Shown in pieces: positions 11,575 through 46,979 of a stretch of 64,000 nt of DNA. The stretch lies in NCBI GenBank assembly GCA_965240325.2, contig OZ251235.1, forward strand, positions 1,798,001 to 1,862,000. Direction: 5' to 3'. A program made the translations under genes and the position numbers. Below the pieces are notes generated by a model that did not search any database, was not told the origin of the DNA, and worked only from the letters and a program-made list of their open reading frames with translations. Within the stretch, counting starts at the first letter, position 1, and every line of letters begins with the position of its first letter. The stretch is from Rebecca billardiae RCC1528 (taxonomy: Eukaryota; Protista; Haptophyta).

Positions 11575-14500
11575 ATGGCGTCGCCCGAGCCCGGCCCGGG
11601 CGGTGGCGCCTCCACCGGCGATGTGTACACGTGGGCGACCAAGGGCGTGGGCGAGCCCGTCCCGCAGCTGATCGAGGCGTGCCGTGGCAAGCAGGTCGCC
11701 GCGCTCGCCGGCGGCTACGGCCACGCCGCCGTCATCTTCCGCGGCGAGCCGCCCTACTGCGAGAGCCTGCCGCTCGACGCGCTCTCCGAGCTGGGCGAGC
11801 TGCGCCAGCTGGCGTTTGGCAAGGACCACGTCGTCGCGCTCACGCTGCAGGGCGACGTGTTCACGCTGGGCAAGGGCGGCTGGGGCCAGCTCGGCCACGG
11901 CAGCATGCGCGACTCGCTCGTGCCGCTGCACGTGCAAAAGCTCGACGGCCGGAACGTCGCGCAGGTGGCGTGCGGCGCGATGCACTCGGTCGCGCGCACG
12001 GCGGACGGCGGCGTGTACACGTGGGGCCGCGGCTTCGAGGGGCAGCTGGGCCACGGCGACGGCCTCCACGAGGCGCAGCTCGCGCCGCGCTACGTCGCCG
12101 CCCTGCACGGCGTGCGCATCCTGAGCGTGAGCGCGGGCGCGATGCACACGGCCGCGCTCACGGTCGACGGCGCCGTGTACTGCTGGGGCGAGGGGACGAG
12201 CGGGCAGCTGGGCGTGGGCAAGCTCACGACGAAGGCGTCGCGCCCCGTCCGCGTCAGCTCGCTCCCGCCCGTCGCCTCGCTCAGCTGCGGCCACATGCAC
12301 ACGGCCGCGGTCGACAGCGCGGGCGCGCTCCACTGCTGGGGGCTCGGCACACACGGCCAGCTGGGCTTCCGCCCGGACGTGCCGAACGCACGCTTCGCCA
12401 CGCAGCCCTTCCTCGTGGGCGGCGTGCTCGAAGGGACGCGCCTCGTCTCCGTCGAGTGCGCGGGCAACGCGACCAGCGCGCTCGACGACGACGGCCTCGT
12501 CTGGGTGCTCGGCAACGGGCGGAGCGAGCCGACGCCGCTGCCGGCGCTGCGGCGCGGCGGCCGCACGTCTGCGCTGCTGTCCAACGGTCTCTCGACGCTC
12601 GGCTTCGTCGAGACGTCGGTGTCGCACACGGTGCCGGCGTGCGCGGCGCTCGACGGCGGCACCGACCTCGCCGTCTACGGCCCCGGCTTCTTCGAGTCCG
12701 AAGTCGTCACCGTCCGCTTCGCGCTGCGCGGCGACGACGGCTCTGCGCCGCCTGCACCCGTCGACGTGGATGGCTACTATGACGTGACCTACTCGGAGCG
12801 TGCGGGCGCGGCGCAGTCAGGCGAGGAGGAGGAGGAGTCGGACGTGATCCGCGTGATCCGCGCGACGGTGCCGCCGCTGCCGCGCGAGGGCGAGACCGCC
12901 GTCTCCGTCTCCTTCGACGGCGGCGCCACCTTCGTCGAGTCGGCCGCCGCCTTCCATTCCGTGCGACAGCCTCGCTTCGGGCGCTGCGAACCGTCGCTGG
13001 TGCCGCTCGGCGGCGGCAAGAGCGGTGGCGTGCTGATGATCCCGGAGGAGGGCGAGCCGGCCGTGTACAGATCGGCCGAGGTCACCGCGAAGCTCGTCAC
13101 GCCGCTGCCCGCCCCCGCGCCCGCAGCGGACGCCGCCGCCGCGCCCGTCGCGGGCGGTGCTGACGTGCTATCCCTCGAGGAACCGACTCCGCCGGCGCAG
13201 CCGCCGACGGTGGAGACGCCGCTCAGCGTGAGCTTCGACGAGGAGGCCGGCACGTACTTCGTCGACCTGCGCACGCTCAGCGCGCCGACGCACGGCAAGC
13301 TCGCCATCGCCGTCGACGGGCAGATCTTCACCCCGCCCAGCGCGGAGATCGTCGTCTACTCGCCGCCGAGCGTGCTCGGCATGAAACCGGTTGCAGGTCC
13401 GCTCACCGGAGCGACCACCGTCACCCTTGAGCTGGACAGCTACGTCGACACCGACGGCGCGAGCGTGCAGCTCGTGCAGCTGCCCGGCGTGCAGGTGGGC
13501 TTCGGCGTGCGCCCGCCGGCGACGGCGCCCGCCGCGGCGCCCGCCGCGCCCGCCGCCGCGGAGGAGGGCGCGCCGGGCGCCGCCGCCGCGCCGGCGTCAG
13601 CGCCCGCGCCCGCGCCCGCGCCCGCAGCCGCGCCGGCACGGCCCGCGTCCGCCGCGCCGGGCGGCGCTGCCGACGGCTCGAGCGGCGAGCCGCCGCTCGC
13701 CGCGGCCCCCGCGCCCGCGGCCGAGCCGCTCACCGTCACGATCGGCGCGCGCGTCGTGCGCGGCGCCGAGGGCCGGCCCGGACTCGCCCTCTTCGACGTC
13801 CCTCCGGACTCTCTGGGCGAAACGCCCGCGGTGTTTGCTGTGCACCTCGCTCTGAACGGGGAGGACTACAACGACACGGGGCGCGTGTACTCGGCGCACG
13901 ACGAGCTGCGCGTGCGCGGCCTCTCGCCCGGCTTCGGCGAGCCCGCCGGCGGGACGGTGGTCAAGGTGCTGGGCGGCCCGTTCTGGGAGACATCGGGCAT
14001 CGCCGCCAAAGTGCACCACGGCGCGACGCAGCTGGTCGTGCCCGGCGCCTTCAACGCGGACGACGGCTCGATTGAGTTCGTCGCGCCGGCATGGGACGTG
14101 GACGCGGACGGTGCGCGCGCGGCGCGCGCCGTCGCGGTGTGTGTGCTGTGCGATGCATCGTGGGGACGGAGGCTCGCGCGCTGGCACACACGCCCTCGGC
14201 GCCGCGCTCCGCGCTCCGCTCCGCTCGACGGCGGCGCGCGCGCGGGCGGAGCGCTCGCCCTCCTGCCGTTGCGCCTAGGTTAGGGTTAGGGTTAGGGTTA
14301 GGGCGCGCGCGCGGGCGGAGCGCTCGCCCTCCTGCCGTTGCGCCTAGGTTAGGGTTAGGGTTAGGGTTAGGGCGCGCGCGCGGGCAGAGCGCTCGCCCTC
14401 CTGCCGTTGCGCTCACCACTGCCGCGCCCGTCCCGTCCGCACCCGCACCACCCACCGCCGGCGGCGGCGCCGCCCGCTTGGCGCGAACGCGCAGGCGACA

Positions 14501-18110: not shown

Positions 18111-19205
18111 ATGCGCGCGGGAACGCTGGTGACCCTGCTCGTATGCGCGGCGGCGCGCTCGAAGGCGCATGCGCCCTCGTTCCGAACGGGTCATGGCGCT
18201 CCTCAGCTTCGGCTCGGCCGCGCCTCTGCTCCTCGCTTGACGGCGTGGACGGCAGAGATGACGTTGACCCCGCCCGCGCAGCGCCTGGGCGCGGGCGTGG
18301 CGTCGGCGCACGCTGACGACGGCACGCCGAGCGCCGCGCGAGCGCTGTTCCGCATGACGCGCCCACGCACCATGCCTCTCTCGGCCGCGCTGATCGCCAT
18401 CGGCGCGTACGGCGCGGAGCACTCCTTCGGCTTCCTGACCAACCCGGCGCTGCAGGGCCAGCTCGCGCTCGTCACTGTGCTCGTGATGGCGACGACCGCA
18501 ACGTCGATGATCGTGAACGACTACTACGACTACCACAGCGGCGCGGACACGCTAAAGGGCGACAAGCGCCCGCTGGTCCTGCAGCAGGTGACGCCGCCCA
18601 CCGTGAAGGCCGCCTGCAAGTGGCTGTACGCCGCGCACCTCGGCCTGCTGCTCTTCGTGCGCCACTCCTCGCTGCGCGCGTGCATCTACCTGAACACGCT
18701 GGCGACGTACCTGTACACGCGCCACTTCAAGCCGATCACGGGCGTGAAAAACCTGCTGTGCGCCGGCGTGATCGCGACGACGGTCGCACTCGGCGCGGCG
18801 GTGGTGAAGGGCACGATGGCGGGTGGGCTCATGGCTGTGTGGCCGCTGGTCGTGACGGTCGGCTGTGGAATCCTGCACCGCGAGATCGTGATGGACGTGG
18901 TCGACGTCGATGGCGACCGCGCCGCCGGGCTGCGCACGCTGCCCACCGTCTTCGGCCGGCGCGGAGCCGTTGGCATCGCCGTGCTGCCGCTGCTGCTAGC
19001 CATTGGCATACTCAACACAGCCGGTGCAGGCGCTGTGCGCTCGCCGCTCGTCAGCTCCGTCCCCATCGCAGCCATGTGCGCTCTCGCCGCCCGCGCGGCC
19101 AGCCACCTGGCCAATGCGCCCGAGCAGGCAGGCCGAAGCCTCGACCTGATTGTCGAGGCCTCGCCTGCTTTGCTCTTTGTCTCGCTGCTGCTCTCGCTGC
19201 AGTAG
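18111..19205 (+). CDS. UbiA-family prenyltransferase, probably plastid-targeted
   Basis: MTRP, NDYYD...AD...RPL and REIVMDVVDVDGDRAAGLRTLP motifs; several TM segments; signal peptide followed by an Arg/Ala/Pro-rich transit-like segment. Confidence 0.9.
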   Translation: MRAGTLVTLLVCAAARSKAHAPSFRTGHGAPQLRLGRASAPRLTAWTAEMTLTPPAQRLGAGVASAHADDGTPSAARALFRMTRPRTMPLSAALIAIGAYGAEHSFGFLTNPALQGQLALVTVLVMATTATSMIVNDYYDYHSGADTLKGDKRPLVLQQVTPPTVKAACKWLYAAHLGLLLFVRHSSLRACIYLNTLATYLYTRHFKPITGVKNLLCAGVIATTVALGAAVVKGTMAGGLMAVWPLVVTVGCGILHREIVMDVVDVDGDRAAGLRTLPTVFGRRGAVGIAVLPLLLAIGILNTAGAGAVRSPLVSSVPIAAMCALAARAASHLANAPEQAGRSLDLIVEASPALLFVSLLLSLQ

Positions 19206-20090: not shown

Positions 20091-21295
20091 TTACTTGCTG
20101 ACGACAATGTCCGGATACTCACCTGTAGAGAGCCACGTCGCGCACTCGGGCGTGAGCTGGTCTCGGACGACCCGGTCATATTTCTCCAGCTGCTCCTTGC
20201 TGAGAACATCCTTCCACCTGTTGTTGGTGCCCTTGTTCACGAAAATCTGGCCACCGCCGTCTGCCTTGCCATCGGCCGCCCACGGCCTCCCACCGAGCGG
20301 CGCGACCTTGTCGCCCATGCCCTGCATGTACTCGAACGTGCACTTGCGCACCTGCTCGTCGAACTTGGCGTCGTCCACCGGCGTGCCGAGGAACTCGGCG
20401 ATGCGCCGCATCTCGCCGGGAAGGTCCGCCTTCAGGTTGTTGAAGTGCACGAAGAGGATGTTCTCGAGGTTGCGGTACTGCCACCACGTGCTCACGTTGT
20501 AAAAGAGCGACCACCACGGCCACCCGTCCGACTCCCACGGGTGCGTCTCCCAGCCCTGCGAGATCCACCGGTCAAAGAGCGTTGCCGGCGTGAACTTCTC
20601 CTCGTGCCACTTCGGCAGCGGCGGCCCGATCAGAGTCGGGCGATCGTTCATGCTGGCGTACCAAGAGTCGTTCCCTTTGTCGTAGTGATGGCACAGCGAC
20701 ATGTACGCGTCGCGGCCGTCGCGGCCGATGTAGATGTACTTGGCCTTGGGATAGTAGGGCATGGCTGTCGCGGGGAGGTGCGTCTTGAGGAAGCGGCGGT
20801 GCTGGAGCTGGTCGATCATCTCCATCTTTGCATCGAGGTCTCCCGCCGCCAGATCCACCCACGGGGAGATGTCGGGCACGGGCTTGGGCGGGTCCTCGCC
20901 GTTGAAGATGAGCATTGCCACGATCTGCTGCATCCAGGTGGTCCCCTGCGGCCGGAAGTGCGAGCGCGCGAAAGGGAGGGGGCGCAGGTCGAGACGGGGT
21001 GCTACGAACACACGCATGCACACGGCTCGGGCCGAACGGGCGGGATGTCCCGCGCTGCCACGCGCGCACGCACCGACTTGTAGGCCGTCACGATGAAGAC
21101 ATCATCGTCGCGCGGGTTGAACTTGTCCCAGACCGTGCTGTCGAAGTGGTGCGACTTGTACACCCGTGTGCGCTTGGGGACGCGGTTGCGATTGGCCAGC
21201 TCGATGTAGAGTTTGGCGGCGCGAGCCAGGAAGTACCCCACCGCCGCGGTGGCGACAAAAAGCGCCGCTTCCTCCAAGCGGATGACGGCATCCAT
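20091..21295 (-). CDS. PAPS-dependent sulfotransferase; exons 21295-21074 and 20945-20091
   Basis: Splicing the GT-AG intron 21073-20946 restores the 5'-PSB loop AYKSGTTW. Also RFLKTHLP, IYIGRDGRD..MS and FVNKG...RWK. Confidence 0.92.
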
Positions 21296-21551: not shown

Positions 21552-24500
21552 TCAGTGCAGCTGGCGATGGTCGGCGCGCGCCGCGTTGGCGCCCGCTCTG
21601 GCCGGCTTGCCGTTCTTCGGCGAGTGCGGCCCCCGGAGCGTCAGCGCGCGCATCAGCGTGCGCGGCGGCTTCCGCTGCGCGCTCTCCGCCATCCTTCGCC
21701 GCAGCCGGAAGCCCTGAAAGTTCGCCTGCACGACCGCGGCGGCCGCCCACGCGAGCGCTCGCGCGCGGTGTGCCTCCCATTGTACAAACTCCTCTGGCAG
21801 TAGCGCGTGGTTGTGCGCGTGGCGCTTGCACAGCAGGTAGAGCAGGTGCTGCGCGCGCAGCGGCGCGCGGTTCGTCGCGTCGTGCACGCTGCCCAGCAGC
21901 GTCGACGACGCCGCGGCCGGCGAGCCGCCGGCGCGCGGCGACGGCGCGCGCGCTGAGAGCGCTTGCGCCTCGCCCTCACGCCGGCTGCGGCCCGAGAGCT
22001 CGGACGCGTCGCTCAGGTCGCCGATGTGCATCTTCTTGAGCGCGACGCGCGCCGCCTGACGCCCCGCCGGCGACTCGACCGCGTTGAGCGCGAGCAGCAT
22101 GTACCTCAGCTCGAGCAGCTCGATCCGGTCCCAGACGACGCCGTGAGAGAGCGCGCGGCGCGCGCCGACTGGTGTCAGGTCGGCCGGCCCAAAGTCCAAA
22201 TCCTCTGGCCCGCGCGCCGGCCCGCCCGTGTACGCGCGCTCGCGCTCGGCGAGCGCGCGCAGCACGTGCGGCAGCTCGTACATCGGCATCTCGTCCGTCG
22301 CCGGCCGCCGCGCGCGCGGCGCCGCGCGCACGACCGCCGCCGAGTGCGAGTGCGTCGCTACCCACGCTTCCAAGAAGAGCCCGAATCTCGCGAGCGAGAT
22401 CGGCCAGCGGCGGCGCTCAAGCACGACCGTGAAGGCGTCGAGGATGGTGGCGACGTAGAGGTTGAGCAGCACGTTGATCACGAGGACCCAGTGCGAGGTG
22501 AAGAAGAGGAACGCCGCGATCGGCGAGCCGCAGTCCGAGTGTCGGCCCGGCGGCGCGTCCGCGGCCGGCGTGCAGAGCGGCGGCGCGACCGAAGCGTCGA
22601 CCATCATCGCTATCCAGTCTTCGCCCGCCGCGACCTCAAAGAGGAGGAGGAGCCCCTTGAAGATGGAGCGGAAGTTGGCGTGGCCGTCGAGGTGCTCGCC
22701 GAGCCGCACGTCGCCGAAGAGCTGCAGCCCGAGCGCCGCGTACATGTACGTGAGCAGCAGCTGCAGCGAGAGGATGTTCACGATCAGCGGCAGGCTGAGC
22801 CGCATTGCGCCCAGGAGCATGTGCACACCGCGCAGCTGCAGCGCGCGCGCGCCCATCTGCACGCGCATGACGAGGCGGAGCGTGGCGAGCGGCAGCGACA
22901 TGCCGTCCACCGAGAAGGGCAGCGCCGCGCGCGCCGGCCGCGGCGTCGCGCACAGCGCGAGCAGCGCCGCCACCACCAGCGCGTCCACCAGCCCCCACAG
23001 AGTGGCCACATACACACGCACTCCGTACGCCGAGAAATCGATCGCGAGCTCGAGCGCAAACGCGACGGCAAAGAGGAGCTTGAGCGCGGCGAAGAGGCGC
23101 TCGTCGAGGGTGAAGTCGCGCACGTGCTCGGCCGTGAGCGCGACCACCGCCAGCCCGCTCAGCGCCGCGCTCGCGCGGTGCACCGCGCCGGACTTGGACA
23201 CCCGCATCGCGACGCGCCGCCAGAGCGCCGCGGGCTCTCGTGCTGCAAACGATCGGTAATGGCCGCGCACGTCGAGCGCGCGCGCGTTGCGCAGGAGGTC
23301 GGCCCAGCGCCGCTGCATCGGCGTGAGGTGCCCCTTGCTCGCCACCTTGTTGAACTCCGCCGCCACCGAGCCGATGAAGATCTTCACGATGAAGAAGCCC
23401 ACGAAGAAATTAAACGCCACGAAAAAGAGGGCGTTGTAGGGAGACGCGTCGGCGCGCGGCTGCTGGCCTGGCGCGACAATGTCGGTGGCGGCGCGCATGA
23501 CGGGGAGCCAGCCCTTCATCGAGGCGCACTCGAAGACGGTGAGGAACGCGCGGCCGAAGTTGTCGAACGTCAGCCGCGGGCTGCTCCACACGCGCGGGCC
23601 GAACACGCCCGTGCCGCCGCTCCGGAACACACCGACGCACTCGGCGCGGCCGCTCACCGTCGGGTCATTGCACCGACCAAACGCGCCGACAAACAGGCTG
23701 AGGCCGATCACGGCGAAGAGGACGAGGAGCACGGTGAAGAGGAAGAGCACGCGCGTCGACGCCTCGAACGACTTGAGCAGCGCCGTCGCCACCAGCCGCA
23801 TCGCCGGGTACCGCGAGACCGCGCGCAGCGGGCGCAGGATGCGCAGCGCGCGCAGCGCGCGCGCAATCCCTCCAGAGTGGCCAAGGAGGTCACTGGCATA
23901 GGAGGCGGCGAGGACGACGACGTCGAGCTGGTTCCAGCCGTCGCGCAGGTACGCGGTCTTGCCGAGCAGCAGCCCGCGCGGCAGCGCCGCCACCAGCCGC
24001 AGCACCAGCTCCACCGAGAAGAACGCGATGAAGATCGTGTCCAGAATCTCGGTCGCGAGATAGACGCGGTTGTTTGCGTTGAGCGGGTGCGCAAGGACGT
24101 CCGGGGCGTCGATGGCGAGGGTGAGCGAGGAGAGGGCGATGACGAAGAGCACGGTCGCCTCGAAGCGCGAGTCGGTGACGATGTGCTGCGCCACCGACGA
24201 CGCGCGCGCGCACGCGCCCGTCTCCACGCCCATGAACGACGACGAGCGCGCGCCCACCGACTGCGCCGGCCGCGGCACGACATCAATCCGAGCGCGCGCG
24301 CGCATTCGCCCGGACACGTCAACGTGGCCGGCGGCGGCGTGCGCGTGCGCGGAGGCGCTGGCGGCGGCGTGCGCGCCGTTGGCGTGCGCGTTGCTGGCCG
24401 ACGACGGCGGCGCCTTCGCGCCGTGGCTCGCGCACACGCTCAGCCGGCGCGCGCCGTTGCTCTGACCGCCGCCGCCGGCCGCGCCGCCGGCCGCGCCGGG

Positions 24501-26693
24501 CCCGCTCGGCGGATGCGCCGCCGTCGGCTCGCGCACCGCGCGCGGCTTGAGGACGACGGAGGACTCGGCCTGGAGGAGGTGCTCCATCATCACCTCGCGC
24601 GCGTCGACGCTCGCGCCGCCGCCGCGCAGCAGCTCGCGCAGCGCCGTCGGGTCCTGCTCCTCGCTCGACGTCTGGCTGCGCTCGTGCACGGCCGCAGCTT
24701 TCCGCGCGGCCTGGTCCTCCTTGCTCTGCGAAGTCGCGGCGAAATTAATCATCAGGATGACGACGAGGAAGTTGAGCGCGACGTACTTGGTGAAGACGAA
24801 GTAGAGGAGGAAGTACGAGGCGCCGATGTACCGCGACACCGCCATCACGTGCCCCATGATCGTCGACGTCCCGCCGCCCGAGAAGACCAGGTCGAGGGTG
24901 AGTAACGATGCGAAGAAATGGTCAAAGTGCGAGCGGGCGCGCGCGCCGCCCTCCAGGTGGTCGAACTCGCCGGCGAAGAGCTGCGTGCCGATGATGGCGA
25001 AGACGAGCATCACGACGAGCAGCAGGACCACCACCGACACCACGCCCGACGCCGAGCGCAGCACCGTCGCCAGCACGATGTCGTGCCGCAGCAGCTTGGA
25101 GAGCAGCCGCAGCGCGCGCATCGAGCGCAGAGCGGTGAATGACGCCGGCAGTGAGAAGCAGAGCGTCGCGAGCGCGGCGACGGTGATGGCGCCGTCGAAG
25201 AGGTTCCACGGCGAGCGCGCGTAGTCGAGCACGCCGAGGATGAGCAGCTTGATCCCCATCTCCACCACGAAGATCAGCGTGAACGCGTCGAGCAGCCGGC
25301 TGATGACCGCGGCCTCGGAGGCGCTCGCGTCCGCCCGCACAAGTGCCATGACCACGACGTTGAGGACGACGATGCCCGTGACGAGGTTCTCGAAGGGCGC
25401 GCTCTCCGGGCCGTCGCCGACGAGGCGGCGGCCGCGCTGGCGCAGCCGCGTGAGCAGCCCCGGCCGGCGCGGCTCGAGCCCGATCGGGTGCGCCACCGCC
25501 GCCCCGCCGCCGTGCGTCGCGCCGAGCCCGCGCGCCGCCGCGAACGTAGCGTACTGCTCGCGCAGCGACTGCCGCGTGGTCGACTGCTGCACCTTGCCGG
25601 TCGTCTGCTTGAAGGAGGCGCGGACGATGGCGATGAAGAGGGAGAAGAAGATGAAGGTGACCGAGACGACCAGCAGCACAAAGTACATCACCGACAGCGC
25701 GCCGTTCGCCTCGAGGATGCCGTGCAGCGTGGGCGCGACGACGACACCCGACGCCGCGTTGAACACCGTGAGCCACGCTGCGAGCGCCGAGTCGAAAGTT
25801 GTGAACGCGCGGTTGTCGACGGCGAGCGGCGTGCACGCGGCGGGCTCGGCGCAGACGGCGGGCCGCGCGGCGAACCACCCGACCGCCGACTCGGGGGGGC
25901 GGCAGAACCGCCTCGGCCGCTGCTCGACCCACTCCGGATCGGCGGCGGCGCCGCCGCCGCCGCCGTCGGCGGCGGTGGCGCCGCCGCCGCCCACGCGCAC
26001 CTGGCATGTCGCGTCGAGCGCGTCCTGGAAGGAGTGGAGGCCGAAGGCGGTGTACACGAGGAGCAGGAGCATCACGAGCACGGCGCAGTCGCGCAGCAGC
26101 GGCAGCGACGCGACCAGCGCCTCGAGCATCCGCCGGATGTTCGTCAGGAACTTGACCGCGCGCAGCGCGCGGATCGCGCGGAACGCGCGCACGGCGCGCA
26201 GCGCCTGCAGCGCGCCGCCGTCGAACTGGGCGTGCGGCATGCTGACCATCAGCACGGCGAACCACGAGATGACGACGATGAACGCGTCCACGCGCGTCCA
26301 GCCGTCGCGCAGCGCCTTGCGCGGGCCGTACGCCACGAAGCGCAGCAGCAGCTCGAGCGTGAAGATGATGGTGAACCACAGGTCGAGCTTGCCGAGCAGC
26401 GGCTTGCTGACGAGCTGGTACGCGCGCACGCGCGTGTCCAGCGCGAGGCCGACGATGCTCAGCAGGATCGTGAGGATGATCACCGGGTCGAAGAGCGGGT
26501 GTGCCAGCACGCCGTGCGCCCACGCCGCGACGCGCTCGGCAAGCGCCGAGACGCGGTCCCAGCAGCGCGGCCGCTGCAGCAGCCGCGCGCGATCCTGCCT
26601 GTAGCGCTCGACGTACGCGTCGGACGGCCTCTCGATGGTCGGGCGCGCCCCGCCACTCGGCAGCGCCGCCAGCTTCGGCGGCGAGGGCGCCAT
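21552..26693 (-). CDS. NALCN: NALCN-like four-domain cation channel (1713 aa, intronless)
   Basis: Four 6-TM repeats with S4 arginine series. NALCN-like signatures PRVWSSPRLTFDN, SMKGW, LTPMQRRWADL, GEDW and PPLCTP...SDCG. IQ-like tail AAVVQANFQGFRLRR. Confidence 0.88.
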   Translation of the reverse strand: MAPSPPKLAALPSGGARPTIERPSDAYVERYRQDRARLLQRPRCWDRVSALAERVAAWAHGVLAHPLFDPVIILTILLSIVGLALDTRVRAYQLVSKPLLGKLDLWFTIIFTLELLLRFVAYGPRKALRDGWTRVDAFIVVISWFAVLMVSMPHAQFDGGALQALRAVRAFRAIRALRAVKFLTNIRRMLEALVASLPLLRDCAVLVMLLLLVYTAFGLHSFQDALDATCQVRVGGGGATAADGGGGGAAADPEWVEQRPRRFCRPPESAVGWFAARPAVCAEPAACTPLAVDNRAFTTFDSALAAWLTVFNAASGVVVAPTLHGILEANGALSVMYFVLLVVSVTFIFFSLFIAIVRASFKQTTGKVQQSTTRQSLREQYATFAAARGLGATHGGGAAVAHPIGLEPRRPGLLTRLRQRGRRLVGDGPESAPFENLVTGIVVLNVVVMALVRADASASEAAVISRLLDAFTLIFVVEMGIKLLILGVLDYARSPWNLFDGAITVAALATLCFSLPASFTALRSMRALRLLSKLLRHDIVLATVLRSASGVVSVVVLLLVVMLVFAIIGTQLFAGEFDHLEGGARARSHFDHFFASLLTLDLVFSGGGTSTIMGHVMAVSRYIGASYFLLYFVFTKYVALNFLVVILMINFAATSQSKEDQAARKAAAVHERSQTSSEEQDPTALRELLRGGGASVDAREVMMEHLLQAESSVVLKPRAVREPTAAHPPSGPGAAGGAAGGGGQSNGARRLSVCASHGAKAPPSSASNAHANGAHAAASASAHAHAAAGHVDVSGRMRARARIDVVPRPAQSVGARSSSFMGVETGACARASSVAQHIVTDSRFEATVLFVIALSSLTLAIDAPDVLAHPLNANNRVYLATEILDTIFIAFFSVELVLRLVAALPRGLLLGKTAYLRDGWNQLDVVVLAASYASDLLGHSGGIARALRALRILRPLRAVSRYPAMRLVATALLKSFEASTRVLFLFTVLLVLFAVIGLSLFVGAFGRCNDPTVSGRAECVGVFRSGGTGVFGPRVWSSPRLTFDNFGRAFLTVFECASMKGWLPVMRAATDIVAPGQQPRADASPYNALFFVAFNFFVGFFIVKIFIGSVAAEFNKVASKGHLTPMQRRWADLLRNARALDVRGHYRSFAAREPAALWRRVAMRVSKSGAVHRASAALSGLAVVALTAEHVRDFTLDERLFAALKLLFAVAFALELAIDFSAYGVRVYVATLWGLVDALVVAALLALCATPRPARAALPFSVDGMSLPLATLRLVMRVQMGARALQLRGVHMLLGAMRLSLPLIVNILSLQLLLTYMYAALGLQLFGDVRLGEHLDGHANFRSIFKGLLLLFEVAAGEDWIAMMVDASVAPPLCTPAADAPPGRHSDCGSPIAAFLFFTSHWVLVINVLLNLYVATILDAFTVVLERRRWPISLARFGLFLEAWVATHSHSAAVVRAAPRARRPATDEMPMYELPHVLRALAERERAYTGGPARGPEDLDFGPADLTPVGARRALSHGVVWDRIELLELRYMLLALNAVESPAGRQAARVALKKMHIGDLSDASELSGRSRREGEAQALSARAPSPRAGGSPAAASSTLLGSVHDATNRAPLRAQHLLYLLCKRHAHNHALLPEEFVQWEAHRARALAWAAAAVVQANFQGFRLRRRMAESAQRKPPRTLMRALTLRGPHSPKNGKPARAGANAARADHRQLH

Positions 26694-27189
26694 CGCTCGG
26701 GCTGTGCTCGGCGAGGGCTTGGCGCTTCAAATCGAGCTCGGCCCCGCCGCGAGCATGGCGCTGAAATCTTGCGCGCAGTGGCGCGCTGTGTGCCTGCCGC
26801 TTGAGCAAGCTGAAAGCGACCACCTTGCGGTGTCGCGCCGCCGCCTCGCGCCTCGCTGTCGAGCTCGCGACGTGGCAGTTGAAACAGTGTTCCAACCGAT
26901 TTACTTGCCACCAACGTCGCTCGTATTCATCTGGCGGGGGGAGTAGATATCATCAGGTTCGGGACTGTTGAGTGTCATATTACGATTGACACTATGGATC
27001 AGAGCAAGCGTACTGTTTTATGGCGGATCAGAGCAAGCGAGCTTGAACGCGAATACAAGTTCATCGCTCTTTCATCGGTTGGGCCACAATTAACCGCCTT
27101 GATGAGGGAACACTCACCACCCTCACTGCCTCAGCAGCACAGGTGGTGCGGGGCCCCTTGGGGAGGGGGGGGGGGGCGGCGCTGTCACC

Positions 27190-36507: not shown

Positions 36508-36968
36508 TCTGCTCGACGACGTTCGTCCGCCGCTACTCCTGCAATATTGCTCTGATGGGCGGCCTAGTAGTGGTGCCCCGGGCAGTGCACCACTACTAGG
36601 CGTCGAAGCGCAACGCTTGACCGCCAGGCTTGACGTACTACGTAGCACGGTCGACGTACGACGATGTCTGTCGTCGATCGTCGAAGACGCGACACCAGAG
36701 AAGGCAGAAGCGCGCGCGACCTGGCCGGCGTGCGCGGACGACTCGTCCTGCGGCCGCCGAGGCGCCTCGGAGTTAGTATCATAGCGCAATAAACCACACT
36801 ATATGAGAATGCTGGCTGCTGCCCGCGCTGCGGCCGGCTGGGCCTGGCGCTGCATGTGGCACATCATGATCAACTGTCAGACACTGTAGTGACTGTGACA
36901 AGCAGCTCGCGCGGACGCACGTCGGCGGACGAAGGGCGGCGCCAGTCCGCCTCGGCCGCACTGGAGAA

Positions 36969-38072
36969 TCAAGGCGGCGGGCACTTGACCGGATGGAACA
37001 CGACGCTGAACTTGCGGTCGGCGGCGCGGCTCGCGGACGCGGACAAATCAGCAGTCGTCACACTGTCACTCACAGTCACAGACGGGAAGAGCTCGGCTGG
37101 CAGATGCCTGAAGTCGCTCGCGTTGGCCGTCGATCTGCTGCCGTTGCGCACGAGTAGCTCGTACTGCCGCGCCTCCGCCACCGACTCGCGCGCGGCGCGC
37201 ATCGACGCCCTGCGCAGCGCGACCGGCTCGGTGACAAGACCCTTGAGGCCGAACGCCGCGTCGAGCCGCTTGTGCGAGCACCGCCGCTTCAGCTGTGTGG
37301 CGCACACATACGGCACCAGGGCCTCGTGGTGGCCGCGGAGCCCGCGGCGGATCGCGGCGTCGATGGCGCGCACGAGGCCGGCCGAGGCGCCGTGCAGCGG
37401 GACGAGGCAGTGCTTCGTCTCGTGCTGGCAGAAGCTGCAGCCCGCGCCCGCCCAGAACCACGCGCCATCCGTAATGCACTTAGAGGTGAGTAAGTACTCA
37501 GTATTCGGCTTGCGGTGCATGGGCGTGCGCAGCAGCAGCCGGCGCCAGGGCGTGAGCATGAGCACGTCGGACTCGGCGAACCAGAACTCGGTGTACTCCT
37601 GCCGCGCGGCCCACGCGAACCACATCACCTTGGACAGCCGCGAGTGGTACGGGCTGAACGCATGCACGGCCTCGAGACCGTACCCGCGCGCGCGGAGTCC
37701 ATACAGCGAGAGCGACTGCTCGAAGGGGACGACGCGCGCGTGCGCGCGGCCACGCAGGGAGCGCCTGGCGGCGGCGGTGACGAGCTCGGGGTCTGCCGAG
37801 GCCGTCGTGTCCAGCAGCACCACCACATCGCAGCGGCCCGGCACCGTGTCCGCCACGTGCTTTGCTCGGCCCGCGACGCAGTCCGTCCAGTTGCCGTGCG
37901 CGCCAAAGACGACCGCGCACGGGCGGCTCGTCTTGACGCGCTGGAAGGCCGGCTGGGGGGGCATGGCCTTCTTGCCCGCGCACGCGACGCCGAGCAGCGC
38001 GAGCCATGCCGACGCGAGGCGTCCTGCTGGCCGCAGGGCTCCACGCCACGGCCGCGAGCGGTCGGCCGCCAT
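36969..38072 (-). CDS. Secreted or membrane-anchored protein, possibly glycosyltransferase-like
   Basis: Signal/TM segment, YTEFWFAESDV...W, GHHEALVP and a terminal FHPVK, resembling GT-A-like families. Start MAADR at 38072. Confidence 0.6.
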   Translation of the reverse strand: MAADRSRPWRGALRPAGRLASAWLALLGVACAGKKAMPPQPAFQRVKTSRPCAVVFGAHGNWTDCVAGRAKHVADTVPGRCDVVVLLDTTASADPELVTAAARRSLRGRAHARVVPFEQSLSLYGLRARGYGLEAVHAFSPYHSRLSKVMWFAWAARQEYTEFWFAESDVLMLTPWRRLLLRTPMHRKPNTEYLLTSKCITDGAWFWAGAGCSFCQHETKHCLVPLHGASAGLVRAIDAAIRRGLRGHHEALVPYVCATQLKRRCSHKRLDAAFGLKGLVTEPVALRRASMRAARESVAEARQYELLVRNGSRSTANASDFRHLPAELFPSVTVSDSVTTADLSASASRAADRKFSVVFHPVKCPPP

Positions 38073-38226
38073 CCTGCTTGCTTGGTTCGCCAGCCGGAGC
38101 AGGCTGTGCGGCCGGCCGGCCATGCGTCGTCGAGGAGGCCTTTCCGGCAAGTGGGTGTGGCGCCCCTCGCCCAGCCGTTTCTGCTGGCCGGGGCGTGCGG
38201 ACGCCCTCGGCGCCGCGAGCATCGCC

Positions 38227-39068
38227 ATGGCGATCGACCCGTACATCGGGCAGCGGCACATACCCTCCGACCCGGCCCCGATCTGGGGCCGCGAGAGCTA
38301 CGACCAGCAGCAGGCCGCCAAGAACCGCAATGCCGAGTACCTTGCCGATTTGCGGCGACAGATGAGCGAGCAGCGCGTGCGCCGGCGCAACGAGCGCTTC
38401 GGCCCCGCGGTCAACCCAAGCGGCGCCGAGGCCGGCGCGGTCGGCGCACACTACGTCGCGCCGCCGCCACCTGAGGCGGCCGAGTCCGCCGCCGCCGCCG
38501 CACGCAACCAGCGCCGCGCGCGCGGAGGACAGGTCGGGGCACAGCTGTTTGGAGCGGAGGATCGCTCGCACGCCGCGGGCGACGACGGGTTGGGCGACGC
38601 GCCCCTGCGGGCGCCTGCGGGCGTGCCGACGCAGCCATACGCGCGCTCTCCGCCGCCGCCGGCCGCGGAGGCCGCCGCCGCCGCAGCCAGGCCGGCCGCG
38701 GGCGCCCGCGTTCCGGTGGGCGCCGGCGGGAGTCCTGTGTTTGCCGGTGGGAGTCCGGTGTTTGCCTCGCCGCCCTACGCCGAATATCGCGAGGCGCTGG
38801 CCGCCGAGGCGGGCGCGGGCGCGGGCGGGTATGGCGGGGAGAGTGAGCCGCCGCCTGCTGGGCGGCTTCCCGCTCGGCTGCGCGCGCTGCAGCGCGATGC
38901 GCAGTCGGAGGCGGCAACGGCGCAGCCGCAACCGCAGCAGCAGCAGCAGCAGCAGCAGTGGCAGCAGCAGCAGCAGTGGCAGCAGCAGCAGTGGCAGCAG
39001 CAGCGGCTGCAGGAGGAGCAGGCGCGTGCCGAGGCGGAGGAACGCGAGGCTCAGCGTGCGCGCGAGGC

Positions 39069-39145
<77 letters not shown>

Positions 39146-39154
39146 GGCAGCAGC

Positions 39155-39190
<36 letters not shown>

Positions 39191-42100
39191 GGCAGCAGGA
39201 GGAGGGCCAGCTGCGCGCACGCCTCGATGCGCAGCGCTTCGACGGCGGCGGCGGGAGCGGCGGCGGTGGCGGGGGCGCCGACGGCGGCGGGCGCGGCGGC
39301 GGCGGCACGCGCCTCCCGGCCGCAGCCGGCGGTCCGGCCGGCGGCGCCTCGCCCGGCGCCGCGCCCCTGGCAGGGCAGTCGCCCGCTCAGCAGTCACGAG
39401 GGCACCACGACGGCGGCGTCGAGCTTGAGGCCCTGCTCGCTCGGCTGAGCGCGTCCGAGGCGGCGCAGGCCGCGCTGCACGAGCAGACGGCGCAGCTGCG
39501 CGCGCAGCTCGACGCTCAGACCCGGCTGGGCGAGGCTCGGCTGGCCGCGGAGGTGCGTCAGCGCTCGGAGCTCGAGCTGAAGGTGCGGCTGCTGGAGGCG
39601 TCGGCGGAGCAGCGCGCGGCGGGCGCGGACGCGGGCGCGCGCGAGCTCGCAGCCGCGATCGACGAGCTGCGCGCGCGCGTGGCCGACGCGCGCGAGACTG
39701 CGGCCGCGGCGGCAAACGGGGCCGACGGTGCCGGCGCGCGCGTCGCGGACGCTCTTGCGGAGCTCAGCGAGGTGCAGCGTGCGGCGCGCGCGCGCGACGC
39801 GGACGTGGACGCGGCGGTGGGCGCGCTACGGGCTGGGCTCGACGAGGCGCGCGCGGCACTGGGGGGCGAGCTCGCCGAGCGCGCGCACTCGGCGCGCGAG
39901 CGCGCGCACTCCCTCGAGGACGAGGCGGCGGCTGCGGGCGCGGCGCTCGGCGCGGCGGGCGCGCGGCTCGATGCGCTTGAGGCGACGACGGCCGCGCTCG
40001 CCGACGCGGTCCGCGACGCGTCGGAGCGCGCGGAGGGCCACGCCGCCGCGGCGCACGAGCAGCTCGGCGCGCTCGGCGCGCGGCTCGACGCGCACGCGAG
40101 CGACGCGGGCGCGCGCGCGGACGCGGCCGAGGCGGCGATCGTCGCCGCGCGCGCCGACGCGGAGGCTGAGGCGCGCGCCGCGCGCGACGAGAGCGCTGCG
40201 CTCGCGCAGCGGCTCGAGGCGGCGGAGGCGGCGGCGGAGGAGGCGGAGTCGGCACTCGGCGCGCGCGCGGACGCGCTCGTGCGCGAAGGCGCGCGGCTCG
40301 AGGCCGCGCTCGGCCGCGAGGCCGAGGCACGCGAGCATGGGCTTGCCGAGCTGCGACAACAGCTGAGCGCGGACAAGGAGGCGGCCGCGCGCGCGCTCGG
40401 CGCGGCCGCGGCCGCCGCCGCCGAGCAGAGCCGCGCGATCGAGGCGGTGCTGCGCGCGGAGGTGCGCGCGCGGCTGCACGGCGAGGCGCAGGCGCGGATG
40501 CGGCTCGACGCCGCCGACGCCGCGCTCGCCGCGACGCGCGCCGAGACGGCCGCAGCGGTGGACGACACGGCCGCGACGCTGGGCGCAGCGCTCCAATCTC
40601 TCACAGCCGACACGGCGGAGGGGCGCGCCGAGCTCGGCGCCGAGCTGAGCGTGCTCAAGGAGCGGCACGCGTCGGTGGAGCGCGCGCGCGACGCGGCGCT
40701 CGCGCGCGTGTCCGACTCGCTCGACGCGGCGCTCGCGTCGATGCGCGCCGAGCTCGGCGCCACCACCTCCGCCGCTGAAGGCTCATTGGGCGCGGCCGAG
40801 GCGCGCGTGCTCGCGCTCGCCGAGCGCGCGCTCGACGGCGTGCGCGCGGACGTTCGCGCGGCGGAGGCGCGGCTGAGCGCGACGGACAGCGCGCTCGCGG
40901 GGCGGATCGCGGACGTGGACGCGCAGGCGGAGGTCCGCGCCGCGCTCGCCGATATGGTCGCCGCTGTCGAGGGCGAGGCGGTGGGCGCGCGCCTCGCCGC
41001 GTCCGAGGTGGCCGCGGCGGGCGCGGTGCGCGCCGCAGTCGTTGCCCTCCGCTCTGAGGGCGAGCAACTTGCCAAGTGGCTGCAGCGCACGGACGCGGCG
41101 GTGGCGGACGCGACGGCGGCGGTAGAGGCGGAGGCGGCGGCGCGGGAGGCCGCGGACGATGAGCTCCGCGCCTCCGCCGACTCCGCCTCCGCCGTCGCGG
41201 ACGCCGGGCTCGCTGCTGTGCGCCGGGCGCTCAGCACGCACGTCGAAGCCCTGGCGGCCATGCTGACCGAGACGCGCGGCGCAGCCGAGCGCGCCGACCT
41301 CGCGCTCGCCGGCGCACTGACCGAGCTCGAGAGCCGACTGGGCGGCGGCGCGGCCGGCGGCGCGCTCGGCGGGCCAGCGCACGCCGGCGGTGCGGGCGCG
41401 CTCGGCCTGAGGCTCGAGCTCGAGCGCCAGCTCAGCGCGCTCGAGGCGACCGCGGCCGCCGAGCGCTCGGGCTTGGCCGCGTCGCACGCGGATGGGGTGG
41501 AGGCGGCCGAGGTGGCGTCGGTGCTGCGCGGCGTCGTCGACCGCGTCGCCGACGCCGAGTCGGCGGGCGCGCTCGGCGACGCGCGCGCGCTCGCCGGCCG
41601 CGCAGCCTCCACCGCGCGCGACGCGGAGTCGCACGCGAGCGCCGCCGAGCGGCGCGCGCGCTCGCTCGAAGCCGCCATGGCTGGGCTCGCTGCCGGCAGC
41701 TCAGACCTGAGGGCTCACATCGACTCCGCCATCGAGGAGCTGGCCAGGCGCGTGGATGCGCTCGCTGCGGGCGGCGGCGGCGCGGCGGGGCCAGCGCAGC
41801 CCGCGCCCGCCGCCGCCGCCGGCGGCGAGAGTGCCGACGCGGACGGCTCGGCCGACGACGACCGCAGCGATGACGACGACGGCGAGGGTGGCAAGGGCGG
41901 TGCCGGCGGAACGGGCGGCGGCGCGCTGGCGAAGCTCAAGGAGCGTGTGGAGGTGGAGAAGCGCCGAGCCACCGCCGCGCTCGAGGCGCTCTCGTCCAGC
42001 GTCGACGGCGCGAGGCAGCTCGCGTCCACCGCCGCCGTCAGCGCCGCGCGCGCCGAGCAGGCCGTACGCGAGGAGGCGGAGGCGCGCGCGGCCGCGATCG

Positions 42101-42815
42101 CAGCGCTCGCGACGGGCGGCGGCGCCGCCGCGCCCGCCGCCGCCGCGCCGCCGCCCGTCGAGAGCGCCGACGGCGCGCAGGTGGACGAGCTGCGGGCGCA
42201 GCTGCTTGTGCTCCGCGCCGAGGCCGAGGCGACGCGCGCGGCCACCGCCACCGAGCTCACGGCCCTCGAGGCGAGGCTGATGGCCGTGACGGACGAGCAG
42301 GCAGCCGTCCTCGAGCGACTGCACGGCGCGACCGACGAGCTGCTGCAGGCGCGCGGCGCGGCGGGGTCGGGCGGCGGAGGGACGGAGTCCGGGGCGGAGT
42401 CCGGGGCGGGGGGCGGGCAGCTCGAGCAGAAGATCGCGGAGGGCGAGGCGGCGATCAAGGCGCTCGGCGAGAGGCTGCAGGCCGTTGTCGACGGCGGCGG
42501 CGCGGGCGGGCGCGAGGCTGCGGAGCTCAAGGTGCGGCGCGCTCGTCGAGCGCGCGCCGCCGCGCGACTGTCACCGCAACTCGTGTGCCAGCGCGGAGGC
42601 CTGCCCAGCGCGCCCGGACGGGGGGCTGTGCGCGCGGAGCGTGGCGCCGTGCGCGCGCGCGCGTGCGCCGCTGCTCGCTGACACGGTGCGCCCCGCGTGC
42701 TTGCGTGCTGCCCGCTCGTGCCGCGCGCGCCGCGCGCCGACCACGCCCGCAGGCGCGCGTCGAGGCTGTCGAGGCACAGCTCGCGCAGACTCTGCAGCAG
42801 CAGCCTGCGGCGTGA
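38227..42815 (+). CDS. Large coiled-coil protein with polyQ tracts; exons 38227-42531 and 42753-42815
   Basis: Start MAIDPYIG, ~1000 aa of Ala/Glu/Arg/Leu heptads, GT-AG intron 42532-42752. Confidence 0.8.
38935..39198 (+). repeat. Coding (CAG)n tracts interrupted by TGG and CGG
   Basis: Two CAG tracts at 38935-39003 and 39070-39198. Confidence 0.95.

Positions 42816-46948: not shown

Positions 46949-46979
<31 letters not shown>

What the first reader, a model, noticed from the sequence alone, without database searches (positions are those of the whole stretch)
21552..26693. NALCN-like channel with a rewritten selectivity filter (V-G-K-E)
Seen: pore loops are DI NAASGVVV (~25740-25760), DII LVFSGGGT (~24866-24890), DIII ECASMKGW (~23508-23532) and DIV EVAAGEDW (~22614-22638). 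Established: human NALCN has EAASQEGW / QILTQEGW / EVLSLKGW / RIVTGEDW (EEKE). Here DI and DII lose both the Glu and the conserved Trp, leaving a net-neutral ring. The 1713-aa ORF is intact and S4 of DI and DIII is strongly charged. Inference: altered selectivity, or a non-conducting voltage sensor or scaffold, in a non-opisthokont.
Basis: partly seen in the sequence, partly recalled or inferred. Interest (0 to 1): 0.72.

Follow-up and report, generated by a model that had tools for sequence, protein, structure and literature searches.

The report
Algal four-domain channel, V/G/K/E pore
This alga has an intact gene for a voltage-sensor-bearing ion channel whose odd, almost uncharged pore lining is the hallmark of an old, untested channel family first noted in water moulds in 2018, not a recent rewrite of the animal leak channel NALCN.

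Summary
Window 21552-26693 (-) is an intact, apparently intronless 1713-aa ORF with four Ion_trans repeats.

The filter was not rewritten from EEKE in this lineage. The protein is the earliest-branching member (UFboot 100 / SH-aLRT 99; SH-aLRT 99 with the pore loops removed) of a clade with A/G/K/E-type filters. That clade includes Saprolegnia, Pythium, the dinoflagellate Durusdinium and environmental eukaryotes. Pozdnyakov et al. 2018 described A/G/K/E filters in oomycetes ("WSC VII").

The clade sits on the same side of a well-supported split as fungal Cch1, away from Cav and Nav. It is not a NALCN/Cch1 orthologue, and NALCN itself could not be put in the tree.

This copy keeps three well-charged S4 sensors, conserved cysteines and clade-specific S6 motifs, and evolves at a normal rate. 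It lacks the PLC-type PH domain and EF-hand-like motif of its relatives, and has lost the clade's R-A-G (DI) and Trp (DII).

I read it as a functional voltage-gated channel with low-charge, probably monovalent-cation, permeation; this is untested. No RNA run was listed.

The scan also noted another four-domain channel (A-D-E-E) elsewhere in this genome.

The parts
21552..26693 (-). Complete single-exon CDS of a four-domain (4 x 6TM) channel alpha subunit, 1713 aa including the stop codon
   Evidence: ORF list and translation. Four Ion_trans repeats. Frame closed 12 codons upstream of the ATG. GC3 0.94 against GC2 0.50.
25605..26501 (-). Domain I (res ~65-363): S1-S4 sensor, S5, cysteine-bearing turret, P-loop, S6
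   Evidence: Pfam. AlphaFold2 model of res 60-365, pLDDT 73.6, with six TM helices plus a re-entrant loop. Clade-invariant C230, C264 and C287 are kept.
26145..26210 (-). DI S4, LQALRAVRAFRAIRALRAVKFL, 6 R/K at every third position
25713..25784 (-). DI P1 helix - turn - P2 helix (res 304-327). V317 is at the filter position; there is no Glu and no Trp.
   Evidence: Alignments. The model gives helix 303-315, coil 316-318, helix 319-327. The clade consensus here is [RK]-A-G; this protein has G-V-V.
25611..25640 (-). DI S6 motif LFIAIVRASF, a clade signature that lacks the usual S6 Asn
24729..25403 (-). Domain II (res ~431-655)
25080..25139 (-). DII S4, FTALRSMRALRLLSKLLRHD, 5 R/K
24867..24890 (-). 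DII pore loop LVFSGGGT. G607 is at the filter position. The Gly-rich SGGGT matches the clade, but the clade's following Trp is Ser here.
   Evidence: W610S
24189..24713 (-). DII-DIII cytoplasmic linker (res 661-835), low-complexity and Ala/Gly/Ser-rich, not conserved
   Evidence: Translation. No conserved columns kept in this stretch.
23334..24188 (-). Domain III (res ~836-1120), the best-conserved domain
   Evidence: Best Pfam and PDB stretches. 35% identity to Pythium P0004 over 292 aa.
23808..23867 (-). DIII S4, IARALRALRILRPLRAVSRY, 6 R/K
23508..23531 (-). DIII pore loop ECASMKGW. K1060 is at the filter position and the Trp is kept.
   Evidence: K or R sits at this position in all clade members.
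23367..23396 (-). DIII S6 FFIVKIFIGS, with Lys1104 where Cav/Nav have the conserved S6 Asn. Shared with most clade members.
23304..23336 (-). DIII-DIV linker motif KGHLTPMQRRW. The clade consensus is G-T-x-L-L-T-x-x-Q-x-x-W. There is no Nav-type IFM.
22410..23168 (-). Domain IV (res ~1176-1428)
22827..22889 (-). DIV S4, LATLRLVMRVQMGARALQLRG, 4 irregularly spaced R. Arginine-poor and irregular across the whole clade.
   Evidence: The same is seen for Saprolegnia 'Saprop6' in the supplement of PMC5824947.
22614..22637 (-). DIV pore loop EVAAGEDW. E1358 is at the filter position, D1359 at n+1, and the Trp is kept. 'AG[ED][DN]W' is a clade signature.
21693..21734 (-). C-terminal IQ-like motif VVQANFQGFRLRRR (res 1654-1667). 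It aligns with the clade's A-A-x-x-[IVL]-Q-x-x-[FY]-R motif, with Arg replaced by Gln at the FR position.
   Evidence: (R1660Q)

Best explanation
The gene encodes a functional pore-forming subunit of a four-domain voltage-gated channel. It is the deepest-branching known member of the protist 'A/G/K/E' clade (WSC VII of Pozdnyakov et al. 2018), here in a V/G/K/E form.

Shown:
- Four 6-TM repeats.
- Regularly charged S4 helices in DI-DIII, with their acidic partners kept (E114/D136, E478/D500, E895).
- A degenerate DIV sensor, shared by the clade.
- Conserved turret cysteines.
- A DI re-entrant loop that still models as helix-turn-helix.
- Clade-specific S6 motifs.
- An ordinary evolutionary rate.

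Inferred mechanism: depolarisation moves the DI-DIII sensors and opens an S6 gate. Ions then pass a narrow ring made of Val, Gly, Lys and Glu, plus Asp at DIV n+1. With only two acidic residues, one Lys and no outer acidic ring, this ring cannot bind Ca2+ tightly as EEEE does. It should therefore pass monovalent cations (Na+-permeable or poorly selective) at low conductance.

Unlike its relatives, this copy has no N-terminal PLC-type PH domain and no EF-hand-like motif. It has probably lost their lipid/Ca2+-linked regulation, while keeping an IQ-like motif.

My odds: clade membership about 0.9; a working channel about 0.7; monovalent-cation permeation about 0.45.
For: - Domain content.
- Filter and S4 alignments.
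- Phylogeny: Q is sister to the 13 other clade sequences, 100/99, in IQ-TREE LG+F+G4 with 92 rows x 1168 columns. SH-aLRT is 99 with all four pore-loop stretches removed under LG+C20 PMSF. FastTree on 175 rows gives 0.995.
- Shared derived features outside the filter: DI S6 LFIAIVRxSF, Lys in DIII S6, LNLYVATILD, AGEDW, arginine-poor DIV S4.
- Constraint: Q keeps 115/164 (70%) of columns conserved in at least 10 of 11 relatives, against 73% for P0177 and 77% for P0004. Root-to-tip distance is 1.30, against 1.00-1.54 in the clade. GC3 is 0.94.
- DI loop geometry.
- Prior description of A/G/K/E and S/S/K/E filters in oomycetes, and the role of Lys in Na+ permeability: PMC5824947. Saprolegnia XP_012194876.1 (= P0091) is in that paper's dataset.
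Against: - No electrophysiology exists for any clade member, so permeation is inference only.
- This copy has lost three otherwise near-invariant pore residues: the DI [RK]-A-G triad, and the DII Trp (W610S).
- Conserved columns are lost somewhat more often in pore modules (21/70) than in voltage sensors (9/54), Fisher p = 0.095. This fits a pore under weaker or changed constraint.
- No expression evidence: no RNA run was listed.
- No orthologue closer than 37% identity exists in 1.84 billion cluster representatives, so dN/dS cannot be measured.
- Deep placement is soft. AU does not reject exclusive grouping with Nav (p 0.058) or Cav1/2 (p 0.075); only Cav3 is rejected (p 0.024).
Confidence: 0.6

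Rival explanations
1. The protein is a non-conducting voltage sensor or scaffold. The pore of this copy, or of the whole clade, no longer passes ions. The protein instead signals through its DI-DIII voltage sensors to partners, as Cav1.1 does in skeletal muscle.
For: - The filter ring is net neutral and there is no outer acidic ring.
- This copy lost the clade's DI R-A-G and the DII Trp, which normally buttress the filter.
- Pore modules lost more conserved columns than sensors did: 30% against 17%, p 0.095.
- The sensors are very well kept.
Against: - S5, S6, the P-helices and the turret cysteines are conserved across a clade spanning oomycetes, dinoflagellates and this alga.
- K1060, E1358, D1359 and both remaining Trp are kept.
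- The DI loop still models as a re-entrant loop.
- A pure sensor would not need a conserved Lys/Glu pair in the filter.
Confidence: 0.17
2. One reading: a NALCN/Cch1 orthologue of a non-opisthokont whose EEKE filter was rewritten to VGKE.
For: - Lys in DIII and GEDW in DIV resemble NALCN.
- The protein lies on the Cch1 side of a split supported at 100/99 and at 99.
- An exclusive clade with fungal Cch1 is not rejected, AU p 0.31.
- PMC12412391 places divergent SAR and algal channels in 'clade A' with NALCN/Cch1.
Against: - In the best trees it groups with the A/G/K/E clade, not with Cch1. Several EEEE and D/D/K/D protist lineages lie between them.
- No relative has EEKE.
- NALCN scores 186 bits against 347 for Cav3.2, whereas a true Cch1 (P0021) scores NALCN at 307 bits, near its top hit.
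- S4 of DI-DIII is fully charged, unlike NALCN/Cch1 (PMC5824947).
- PMC12412391 reports complete conservation of the four-subunit complex (NALCN/Cch1, FAM155/Mid1, UNC79, UNC80) in animals, fungi and apusomonads.
Confidence: 0.06
3. The channel has a selectivity outside the cation repertoire of known four-domain channels (anion, proton or other). The cause would be the Lys plus, in relatives, a conserved Arg next to the DI filter position, with very few acidic residues.
For: - The clade has a conserved [RK] at DI n-1 and K/R in DIII, giving a net zero or positive inner ring.
- Three members have Arg instead of Lys in DIII.
Against: - This copy lacks the DI Arg (G316).
- E1358/D1359 are conserved as acidic residues in the whole clade.
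- No four-domain channel with anion selectivity is known to me (own knowledge).
- The n-1 side chain usually points away from the pore in Cav/Nav structures (own knowledge, not tested here).
Confidence: 0.07
4. It is a decaying or relaxed paralogue: an unexpressed gene copy drifting towards a pseudogene.
For: - It lacks the PH domain and EF-hand-like motif of all relatives, and four hallmark pore residues.
- No RNA run was listed.
Against: - 1713 codons without a stop where composition predicts 27.
- GC3 0.94 against GC2 0.50.
- The branch length is ordinary for the clade.
- 70% of clade-conserved columns are kept, including S4 arginines, countercharges and cysteines.
Confidence: 0.05

Closest known systems
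Oomycete four-domain channels with A/G/K/E or S/S/K/E filters ('WSC VII', Pozdnyakov et al. 2018, PMC5824947), e.g. Saprolegnia parasitica XP_012194876.1
   Same: - Same clade in all trees.
- Neutral small residues in DI and DII, Lys in DIII, Glu plus acidic/Asn n+1 in DIV.
- Gly-rich DII loop and arginine-poor DIV S4.
- Same S6 signatures and same turret cysteines.
- Genes intronless where DNA was seen.
   Different: - Val instead of Ala/Ser in DI.
- The clade's [RK]-A-G triad and DII Trp are lost.
- No N-terminal PLC-type PH domain and no EF-hand-like FDxxGxGxI motif.
- Only 25-29% identical to the other clade members and the earliest branch.
- The host is an alga, not an oomycete.
NALCN (animals) / Cch1 (fungi)
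   Same: - Lys in the DIII filter position and a GE[DN]W loop in DIV.
- Same side of the deepest well-supported split.
- At least one degenerate S4.
   Different: - Not an orthologue.
- Filter V/G/K/E against EEKE/EKEE/EEEE.
- DI-DIII S4 fully charged, against arginine-poor in Cch1.
- Weak similarity to NALCN (186 bits).
- Partner subunits unknown.
Animal Nav1 (D/E/K/A)
   Same: - Lys in DIII, thought to confer Na+ permeability.
- Asymmetric filter with an uncharged residue in one domain.
- Strong S4s.
   Different: - Acidic residues sit in DIV rather than in DI/DII.
- No outer acidic ring and no IFM gate (HLTP instead).
- DIV sensor degenerate.
- Nav lies on the other side of the split. Exclusive grouping is disfavoured (delta lnL 91, AU p 0.058).
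D/D/K/D channels of oomycetes and cryptophytes (WSC VI/VIII). P0118 and P0095 here carry the same filter type (taxa not named).
   Same: - DIII Lys.
- Neighbours in the tree: sister at 77/87.
   Different: - They keep acidic residues and the Trp in DI/DII.
- Sisterhood disappears when the pore loops are removed.
Cav3 / Cav1 (best-scoring solved structures)
   Same: Highest pairwise scores (347 and 339 bits), the general 4 x 6TM architecture, and an IQ-like C-terminal motif.
   Different: - No EEEE/EEDD filter.
- No GPHH/EF-hand hit in Pfam.
- An exclusive clade with Cav3 is rejected (AU p 0.024).

Membership tests
Four-domain voltage-gated cation channel superfamily (4 x 6TM, Pfam Ion_trans) | Four homologous Ion_trans repeats on one chain | tested here: met
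   PF00520, 4 stretches, E 1.3e-145. Collinear with Cav, Nav and NALCN structures.
Four-domain voltage-gated cation channel superfamily (4 x 6TM, Pfam Ion_trans) | S4 helices with R/K at every third position | tested here: met
   DI 6, DII 5 and DIII 6 regular charges. DIV is irregular.
Four-domain voltage-gated cation channel superfamily (4 x 6TM, Pfam Ion_trans) | Re-entrant P-loop with an acidic residue and Trp in each domain | tested here: not met
   Acidic residue only in DIV; Trp only in DIII and DIV. The loop architecture in DI is still predicted.
A/G/K/E clade (WSC VII, PMC5824947) | Monophyly with the Saprolegnia/Pythium members | tested here: met
   100/99; SH-aLRT 99 without pore-loop columns; 0.995.
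A/G/K/E clade (WSC VII, PMC5824947) | Filter: small neutral residue in DI and Gly in DII | tested here: met
   V317 against Ala/Ser in relatives; G607 inside the shared SGGGT loop.
A/G/K/E clade (WSC VII, PMC5824947) | Filter: Lys/Arg in DIII and Glu/Asp in DIV within AG[ED][DN]W | tested here: met
   K1060; AAGEDW.
A/G/K/E clade (WSC VII, PMC5824947) | DI [RK]-A-G triad, and a Trp after the DII Gly run | tested here: not met
   G316-V317-V318, and S610 in place of Trp.
A/G/K/E clade (WSC VII, PMC5824947) | Clade S6 signatures (DI AIVR, DIII Lys for Asn, DIV LNLYVA.ILD) and an arginine-poor DIV S4 | tested here: met
A/G/K/E clade (WSC VII, PMC5824947) | N-terminal PLC-type PH domain and post-S6 EF-hand-like motif (my own definition, from the 11 relatives) | tested here: not met
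   No match in any stop-free fragment of the window; best E 7.8. Frame closed upstream of the ATG. D1448H and G1453A in the motif.
NALCN/Cch1 | Groups with NALCN/Cch1 to the exclusion of other protist channel clades | tested here: inconclusive
   Same superclade as fungal Cch1, but not sister in the best trees. The exclusive clade is not rejected (AU p 0.31). No NALCN sequence could be fetched for the tree.
NALCN/Cch1 | EEKE / EKEE / EEEE filter | tested here: not met
   V/G/K/E. NALCN motifs as given in PMC5824947.
NALCN/Cch1 | Arginine/lysine-poor S4 segments (voltage-insensitive type) | tested here: not met
   DI-DIII are fully charged, whereas Cch1 P0021 and P0310 are poor in DI/DII.
NALCN/Cch1 | Partner subunits FAM155/Mid1, UNC79 and UNC80 in the genome | not testable with these tools
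Only this 64-kb window is readable.
Nav1 (DEKA) | D/E/K/A filter, IFM inactivation particle, placement in the Nav clade | tested here: not met
   Only the DIII Lys is shared. The linker has HLTP. Nav is on the other side of the split. AU p 0.058.

The most novel reading that the evidence does not exclude
The A/G/K/E-type clade, including this PH-less V/G/K/E algal form, is a distinct functional class of voltage-gated channel. It is spread across oomycetes, dinoflagellates, haptophyte-type algae and uncultured marine eukaryotes. Its one-Lys/one-Glu filter would give a selectivity mechanism unlike EEEE, DEKA or EEKE, for example an independent route to Na+ selectivity or a new permeant species. 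Most members would be gated or tethered by phosphoinositides through a PLC-type PH domain. These channels could also be the missing partners of the Mid1 homologues that oomycetes have without any recognised Cch1.
Probability: 0.25. Interest if true: 0.75.

Novelty: new member of a known kind. Interest (0 to 1): 0.45.

Why it matters
Four-domain channels underlie fast electrical signalling, and their ion choice is read from four filter residues. This gene shows that the nearly uncharged A/G/K/E-type filter, known only as a sequence oddity of oomycetes, is old and conserved. It also reaches an alga and a dinoflagellate.

That makes the clade a good target for asking how a pore with one Lys and one Glu selects ions. 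It also bears on whether Na+-permeable four-domain channels arose outside animals.

The algal copy is short (1713 aa), intronless and lacks accessory domains. It is therefore a convenient construct for expression and structure work, and a natural comparison with its PH-domain-bearing relatives.

Tried and rejected
1. Word-index search with the whole protein and with the clade alignment A1. Both were swamped by generic Cav/Nav candidates. The second did not even return the clade, so it says nothing.
2. Exact look-up of the protein: not on record.
3. Metagenome DNA scan with the protein: 40 pattern matches, none confirmed.
4. RNA runs: none was listed, so read laying was not used and expression is open.
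5. NALCN for the tree: no tool returned a NALCN sequence as a usable reference. I used seven or eight fungal Cch1 sequences as proxy, after checking P0021 against PDB and by its hits.
6. treekit's AU test under LG+C20 did not finish in 863 s. I replaced it with fast LG+F+G4 constrained searches plus an AU test.
7. First MAFFT --auto run timed out. My first whole-frame HMM search for the PH domain was invalid because the targets were too long. I redid it on 1054 stop-free fragments.
8. Taxon of the genome: I could not verify it. The Atlas search of the neighbouring sulfotransferase was uninformative. 'Haptophyte-type alga' comes from other agents' notes only.
9. Full four-domain structure model: not possible, because the limit is 1200 aa and the pore needs res 60-1430. 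Only DI was folded.
10. Considered and rejected: a prokaryotic origin (four fused repeats, eukaryote-type neighbours), and the long antisense ORFs over the gene (e.g. 21963-24905 +), which are by-products of 70% GC.

Full report
**Observation**

The minus-strand ORF 21552-26693 is intact: 1713 aa with an ATG start. The frame is closed by a stop 12 codons upstream of the ATG, and the upstream sequence is stop-rich. Pfam finds four Ion_trans repeats, E 1.3e-145.

- DI NAASGVVV, 25737-25760
- DII LVFSGGGT, 24867-24890
- DIII ECASMKGW, 23508-23531
- DIV EVAAGEDW, 22614-22637

Two independent alignments against about 180 four-domain channels (hmmalign; MAFFT L-INS-i per domain) put V317, G607, K1060 and E1358 at the filter position. 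DI and DII lack both the acidic residue and the Trp.

S4 carries 6, 5 and 6 regularly spaced R/K in DI-DIII, and 4 irregular ones in DIV.

The ORF is not a by-product of 70% GC. Composition predicts about 27 stops in 1713 codons, P about 1e-12. GC at codon positions 1/2/3 is 0.71/0.50/0.94.

**Nearest relatives**

By raw similarity the best solved structures are Cav3.2 (347 bits), Cav1.3 (339) and Nav1.5 (315). Human NALCN reaches only 186 bits.

An exhaustive HMMER search of 1.84 billion cluster representatives, using residues 255-1450, found 12,396 relatives. None was above 37% identity. The protein is not on record as an exact sequence, and a metagenome DNA scan found no close copy. So no orthologue close enough for dN/dS exists in the collections searched.

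I aligned all hits to one profile and read off the pore loops. A dozen hits share the odd loops:
- DI x-[RK]-[AS]-G-[ILF], with no Glu and no Trp
- DII [ST]-G-G-G-T-W
- DIII [KR]-[GA]-W
- DIV A-G-[ED]-[DN]-W

Named members are Saprolegnia parasitica and S. diclina, [Pythium] brassicae and the dinoflagellate Durusdinium trenchii. The rest come from EukProt transcriptomes and from ENA, JGI and Logan assemblies. Two of these are single-exon genes on ENA metagenome scaffolds.

**This kind of filter is already in the literature**

Pozdnyakov et al. 2018 (PMC5824947) describe an oomycete clade, WSC VII. It has A/G/K/E in Aphanomyces and Saprolegnia and S/S/K/E in Phytophthora, and the authors flag its members as candidate Na+-permeable channels.

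The Saprolegnia protein in my clade, XP_012194876.1, is 'Saprop6' in their dataset. It shows the same arginine-poor DIV S4 that I see.

**Phylogeny**

- IQ-TREE (LG+F+G4, 92 rows x 1168 columns) places the window's protein as sister to all other A/G/K/E-type sequences, with UFboot/SH-aLRT 100/99.
- FastTree on 175 rows gives 0.995.
- I removed all four pore-loop stretches to avoid circularity and used LG+C20 PMSF. The grouping still has SH-aLRT 99.

The grouping is backed by shared derived characters outside the filter:
- DI S6 LFIAIVRxSF, lacking the usual Asn
- Lys at the conserved Asn position of DIII S6
- DIV S6 LNLYVATILD
- a degenerate DIV S4

**Is it NALCN-like?**

In all three trees the A/G/K/E clade lies on one side of a well-supported split: 100/99, 99, and also present. 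That side also holds D/D/K/D channels, several EEEE protist lineages and the fungal Cch1 clade. Cav1/2, Cav3 and Nav lie on the other side.

I verified the Cch1 reference. P0021 scores NALCN at 307 bits, near its top hit, and its homologues are all fungal CCH1.

This split matches 'clade A' of PMC12412391, which unites NALCN/Cch1 with divergent channels of SAR, Cryptista and algae.

But the clade is not sister to Cch1 in the best trees. AU tests on the pore-masked alignment show how soft the deep placement is:
- exclusive grouping with Cch1: not rejected, p 0.31
- with Cav3: rejected, p 0.024
- with Nav: marginal, p 0.058
- with Cav1/2: marginal, p 0.075

NALCN itself could not be included, because no tool returned it as a usable reference.

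So 'NALCN-like' holds at superclade level only. The EEKE-rewritten story does not hold, because every near relative already has neutral DI/DII positions.

**State of this copy**

It keeps 115 of the 164 columns (70%) that are conserved in at least 10 of its 11 relatives. This is similar to the other deep branches (P0177 73%, Pythium 77%). Its root-to-tip distance, 1.30, is inside the clade's range of 1.00-1.54.

Kept residues include the S4 arginines, the S2/S3 acidic partners (E114, D136, E478, D500, E895) and the turret cysteines (C230, C264, C287, C1008, C1019, C1374, C1388).

Lost features are:
- the DI [RK]-A-G triad, here G-V-V
- the DII Trp (S610)
- the post-S6 EF-hand-like FDxxGxGxI motif
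- one Arg of the IQ-like motif

Pore modules lost conserved columns somewhat more often than voltage sensors did: 21/70 against 9/54, Fisher p 0.095.

An AlphaFold2 model of domain I (pLDDT 73.6) still gives P1 helix 303-315, a three-residue turn 316-318 holding V317, P2 helix 319-327, and S6.

**A by-product: a PH domain in the relatives**

All 11 relatives carry a conserved N-terminal domain of about 130 aa that Pfam does not recognise. Its AlphaFold2 model (pLDDT 81.7) matches the N-terminal PH domains of PLC-gamma, PLC-delta and PLC-beta, E 3e-6 to 1e-4, probability 1.00.

The window's protein lacks this domain. Neither tblastn nor a profile search of 1054 stop-free fragments finds it anywhere in the 64 kb; best E is 7.8. 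I found no paper linking a PH domain to four-domain channels in the searchable library.

**Mechanism (inference)**

Three intact sensors and conserved S5/S6 argue for a voltage-gated pore. The ring V/G/K/E, plus Asp at DIV n+1, has one positive and two negative charges and no outer acidic ring. It cannot form the high-affinity Ca2+ site of EEEE channels.

With a DIII Lys, as in Nav1 and NALCN, the most economical prediction is Na+-permeable or poorly selective monovalent conduction of low conductance.

The main rival is a non-conducting sensor. Less likely are exotic selectivity, true NALCN orthology, or decay.

**Surroundings**

The neighbours are ordinary eukaryotic genes:
- sulfotransferase, 20091-21023 (-)
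- UbiA prenyltransferase, 18111-19205 (+)
- RCC1-repeat protein
- Bin3 methyltransferase
- G-patch protein
- LIM/CAP protein

Nothing nearby looks like a channel partner.

Other agents' notes call the genome a very GC-rich haptophyte-type alga, and record another four-domain channel with an A-D-E-E filter elsewhere in it. I could not verify the taxon.

**Verdict**

This is a real, intact and unusual channel gene. It is a new, divergent and domain-poor member of a sequence-defined family that was already reported. It is not a rewritten NALCN.

Noticed in passing
Related proteins P0058:1-165, P0091:1-168, P0004:1-175, P0036:1-198, P0056:1-150 and others (not in the window): Every other member of the A/G/K/E clade has an N-terminal domain of about 130 aa (motif GRxTTNFxRTxKY...LPxxDxxCFSL...DLE) that Pfam does not see. 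It models confidently and matches the PH domains of PLC-gamma, -delta and -beta. A PLC-type PH domain fused to a four-domain channel was not mentioned in any paper I could search.
   Followed up: yes
Literature and tree: PMC5395580: Oomycetes have Mid1 homologues but are reported to have 'no CCH1 homolog'. In my trees the oomycete A/G/K/E channels sit in the same superclade as fungal Cch1, as do the unnamed D/D/K/D-type channels P0118 and P0095. These channels are therefore candidate Mid1 partners.
   Followed up: no
window 14260-14400: Two blocks of (TTAGGG)4-like telomere repeats, each between near-identical ~45-bp GC-rich flanks.
   Followed up: partly
window 46675-55038 (+): A 2787-aa ORF with no Pfam hit, in a stretch with strong negative GC skew (-0.28) and up to 80% GC. 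Whether it is a real giant low-complexity gene or a compositional artefact is open.
   Followed up: partly
window 21963-24905 (+) and 24922-26895 (-): Long ORFs (980 and 657 aa) overlap the channel gene antisense or out of frame. They are expected by-products of 70% GC and GC3 0.94, not genes.
   Followed up: partly
window 36856-42681 (+): A 1941-aa ORF in a region of 78-80% GC with no Pfam family. Not examined further.
   Followed up: no
Hits P0001, P0313, P0323, P0033: Several environmental four-domain or Ion_trans proteins carry unusual extra domains in the precomputed Pfam lists: SAM (PF00536) in P0001, DEP (PF00610) in P0313, a neurotransmitter-gated channel TM region (PF02932) in P0323, and WD40 (PF00400) among several others in P0033.
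   Followed up: no
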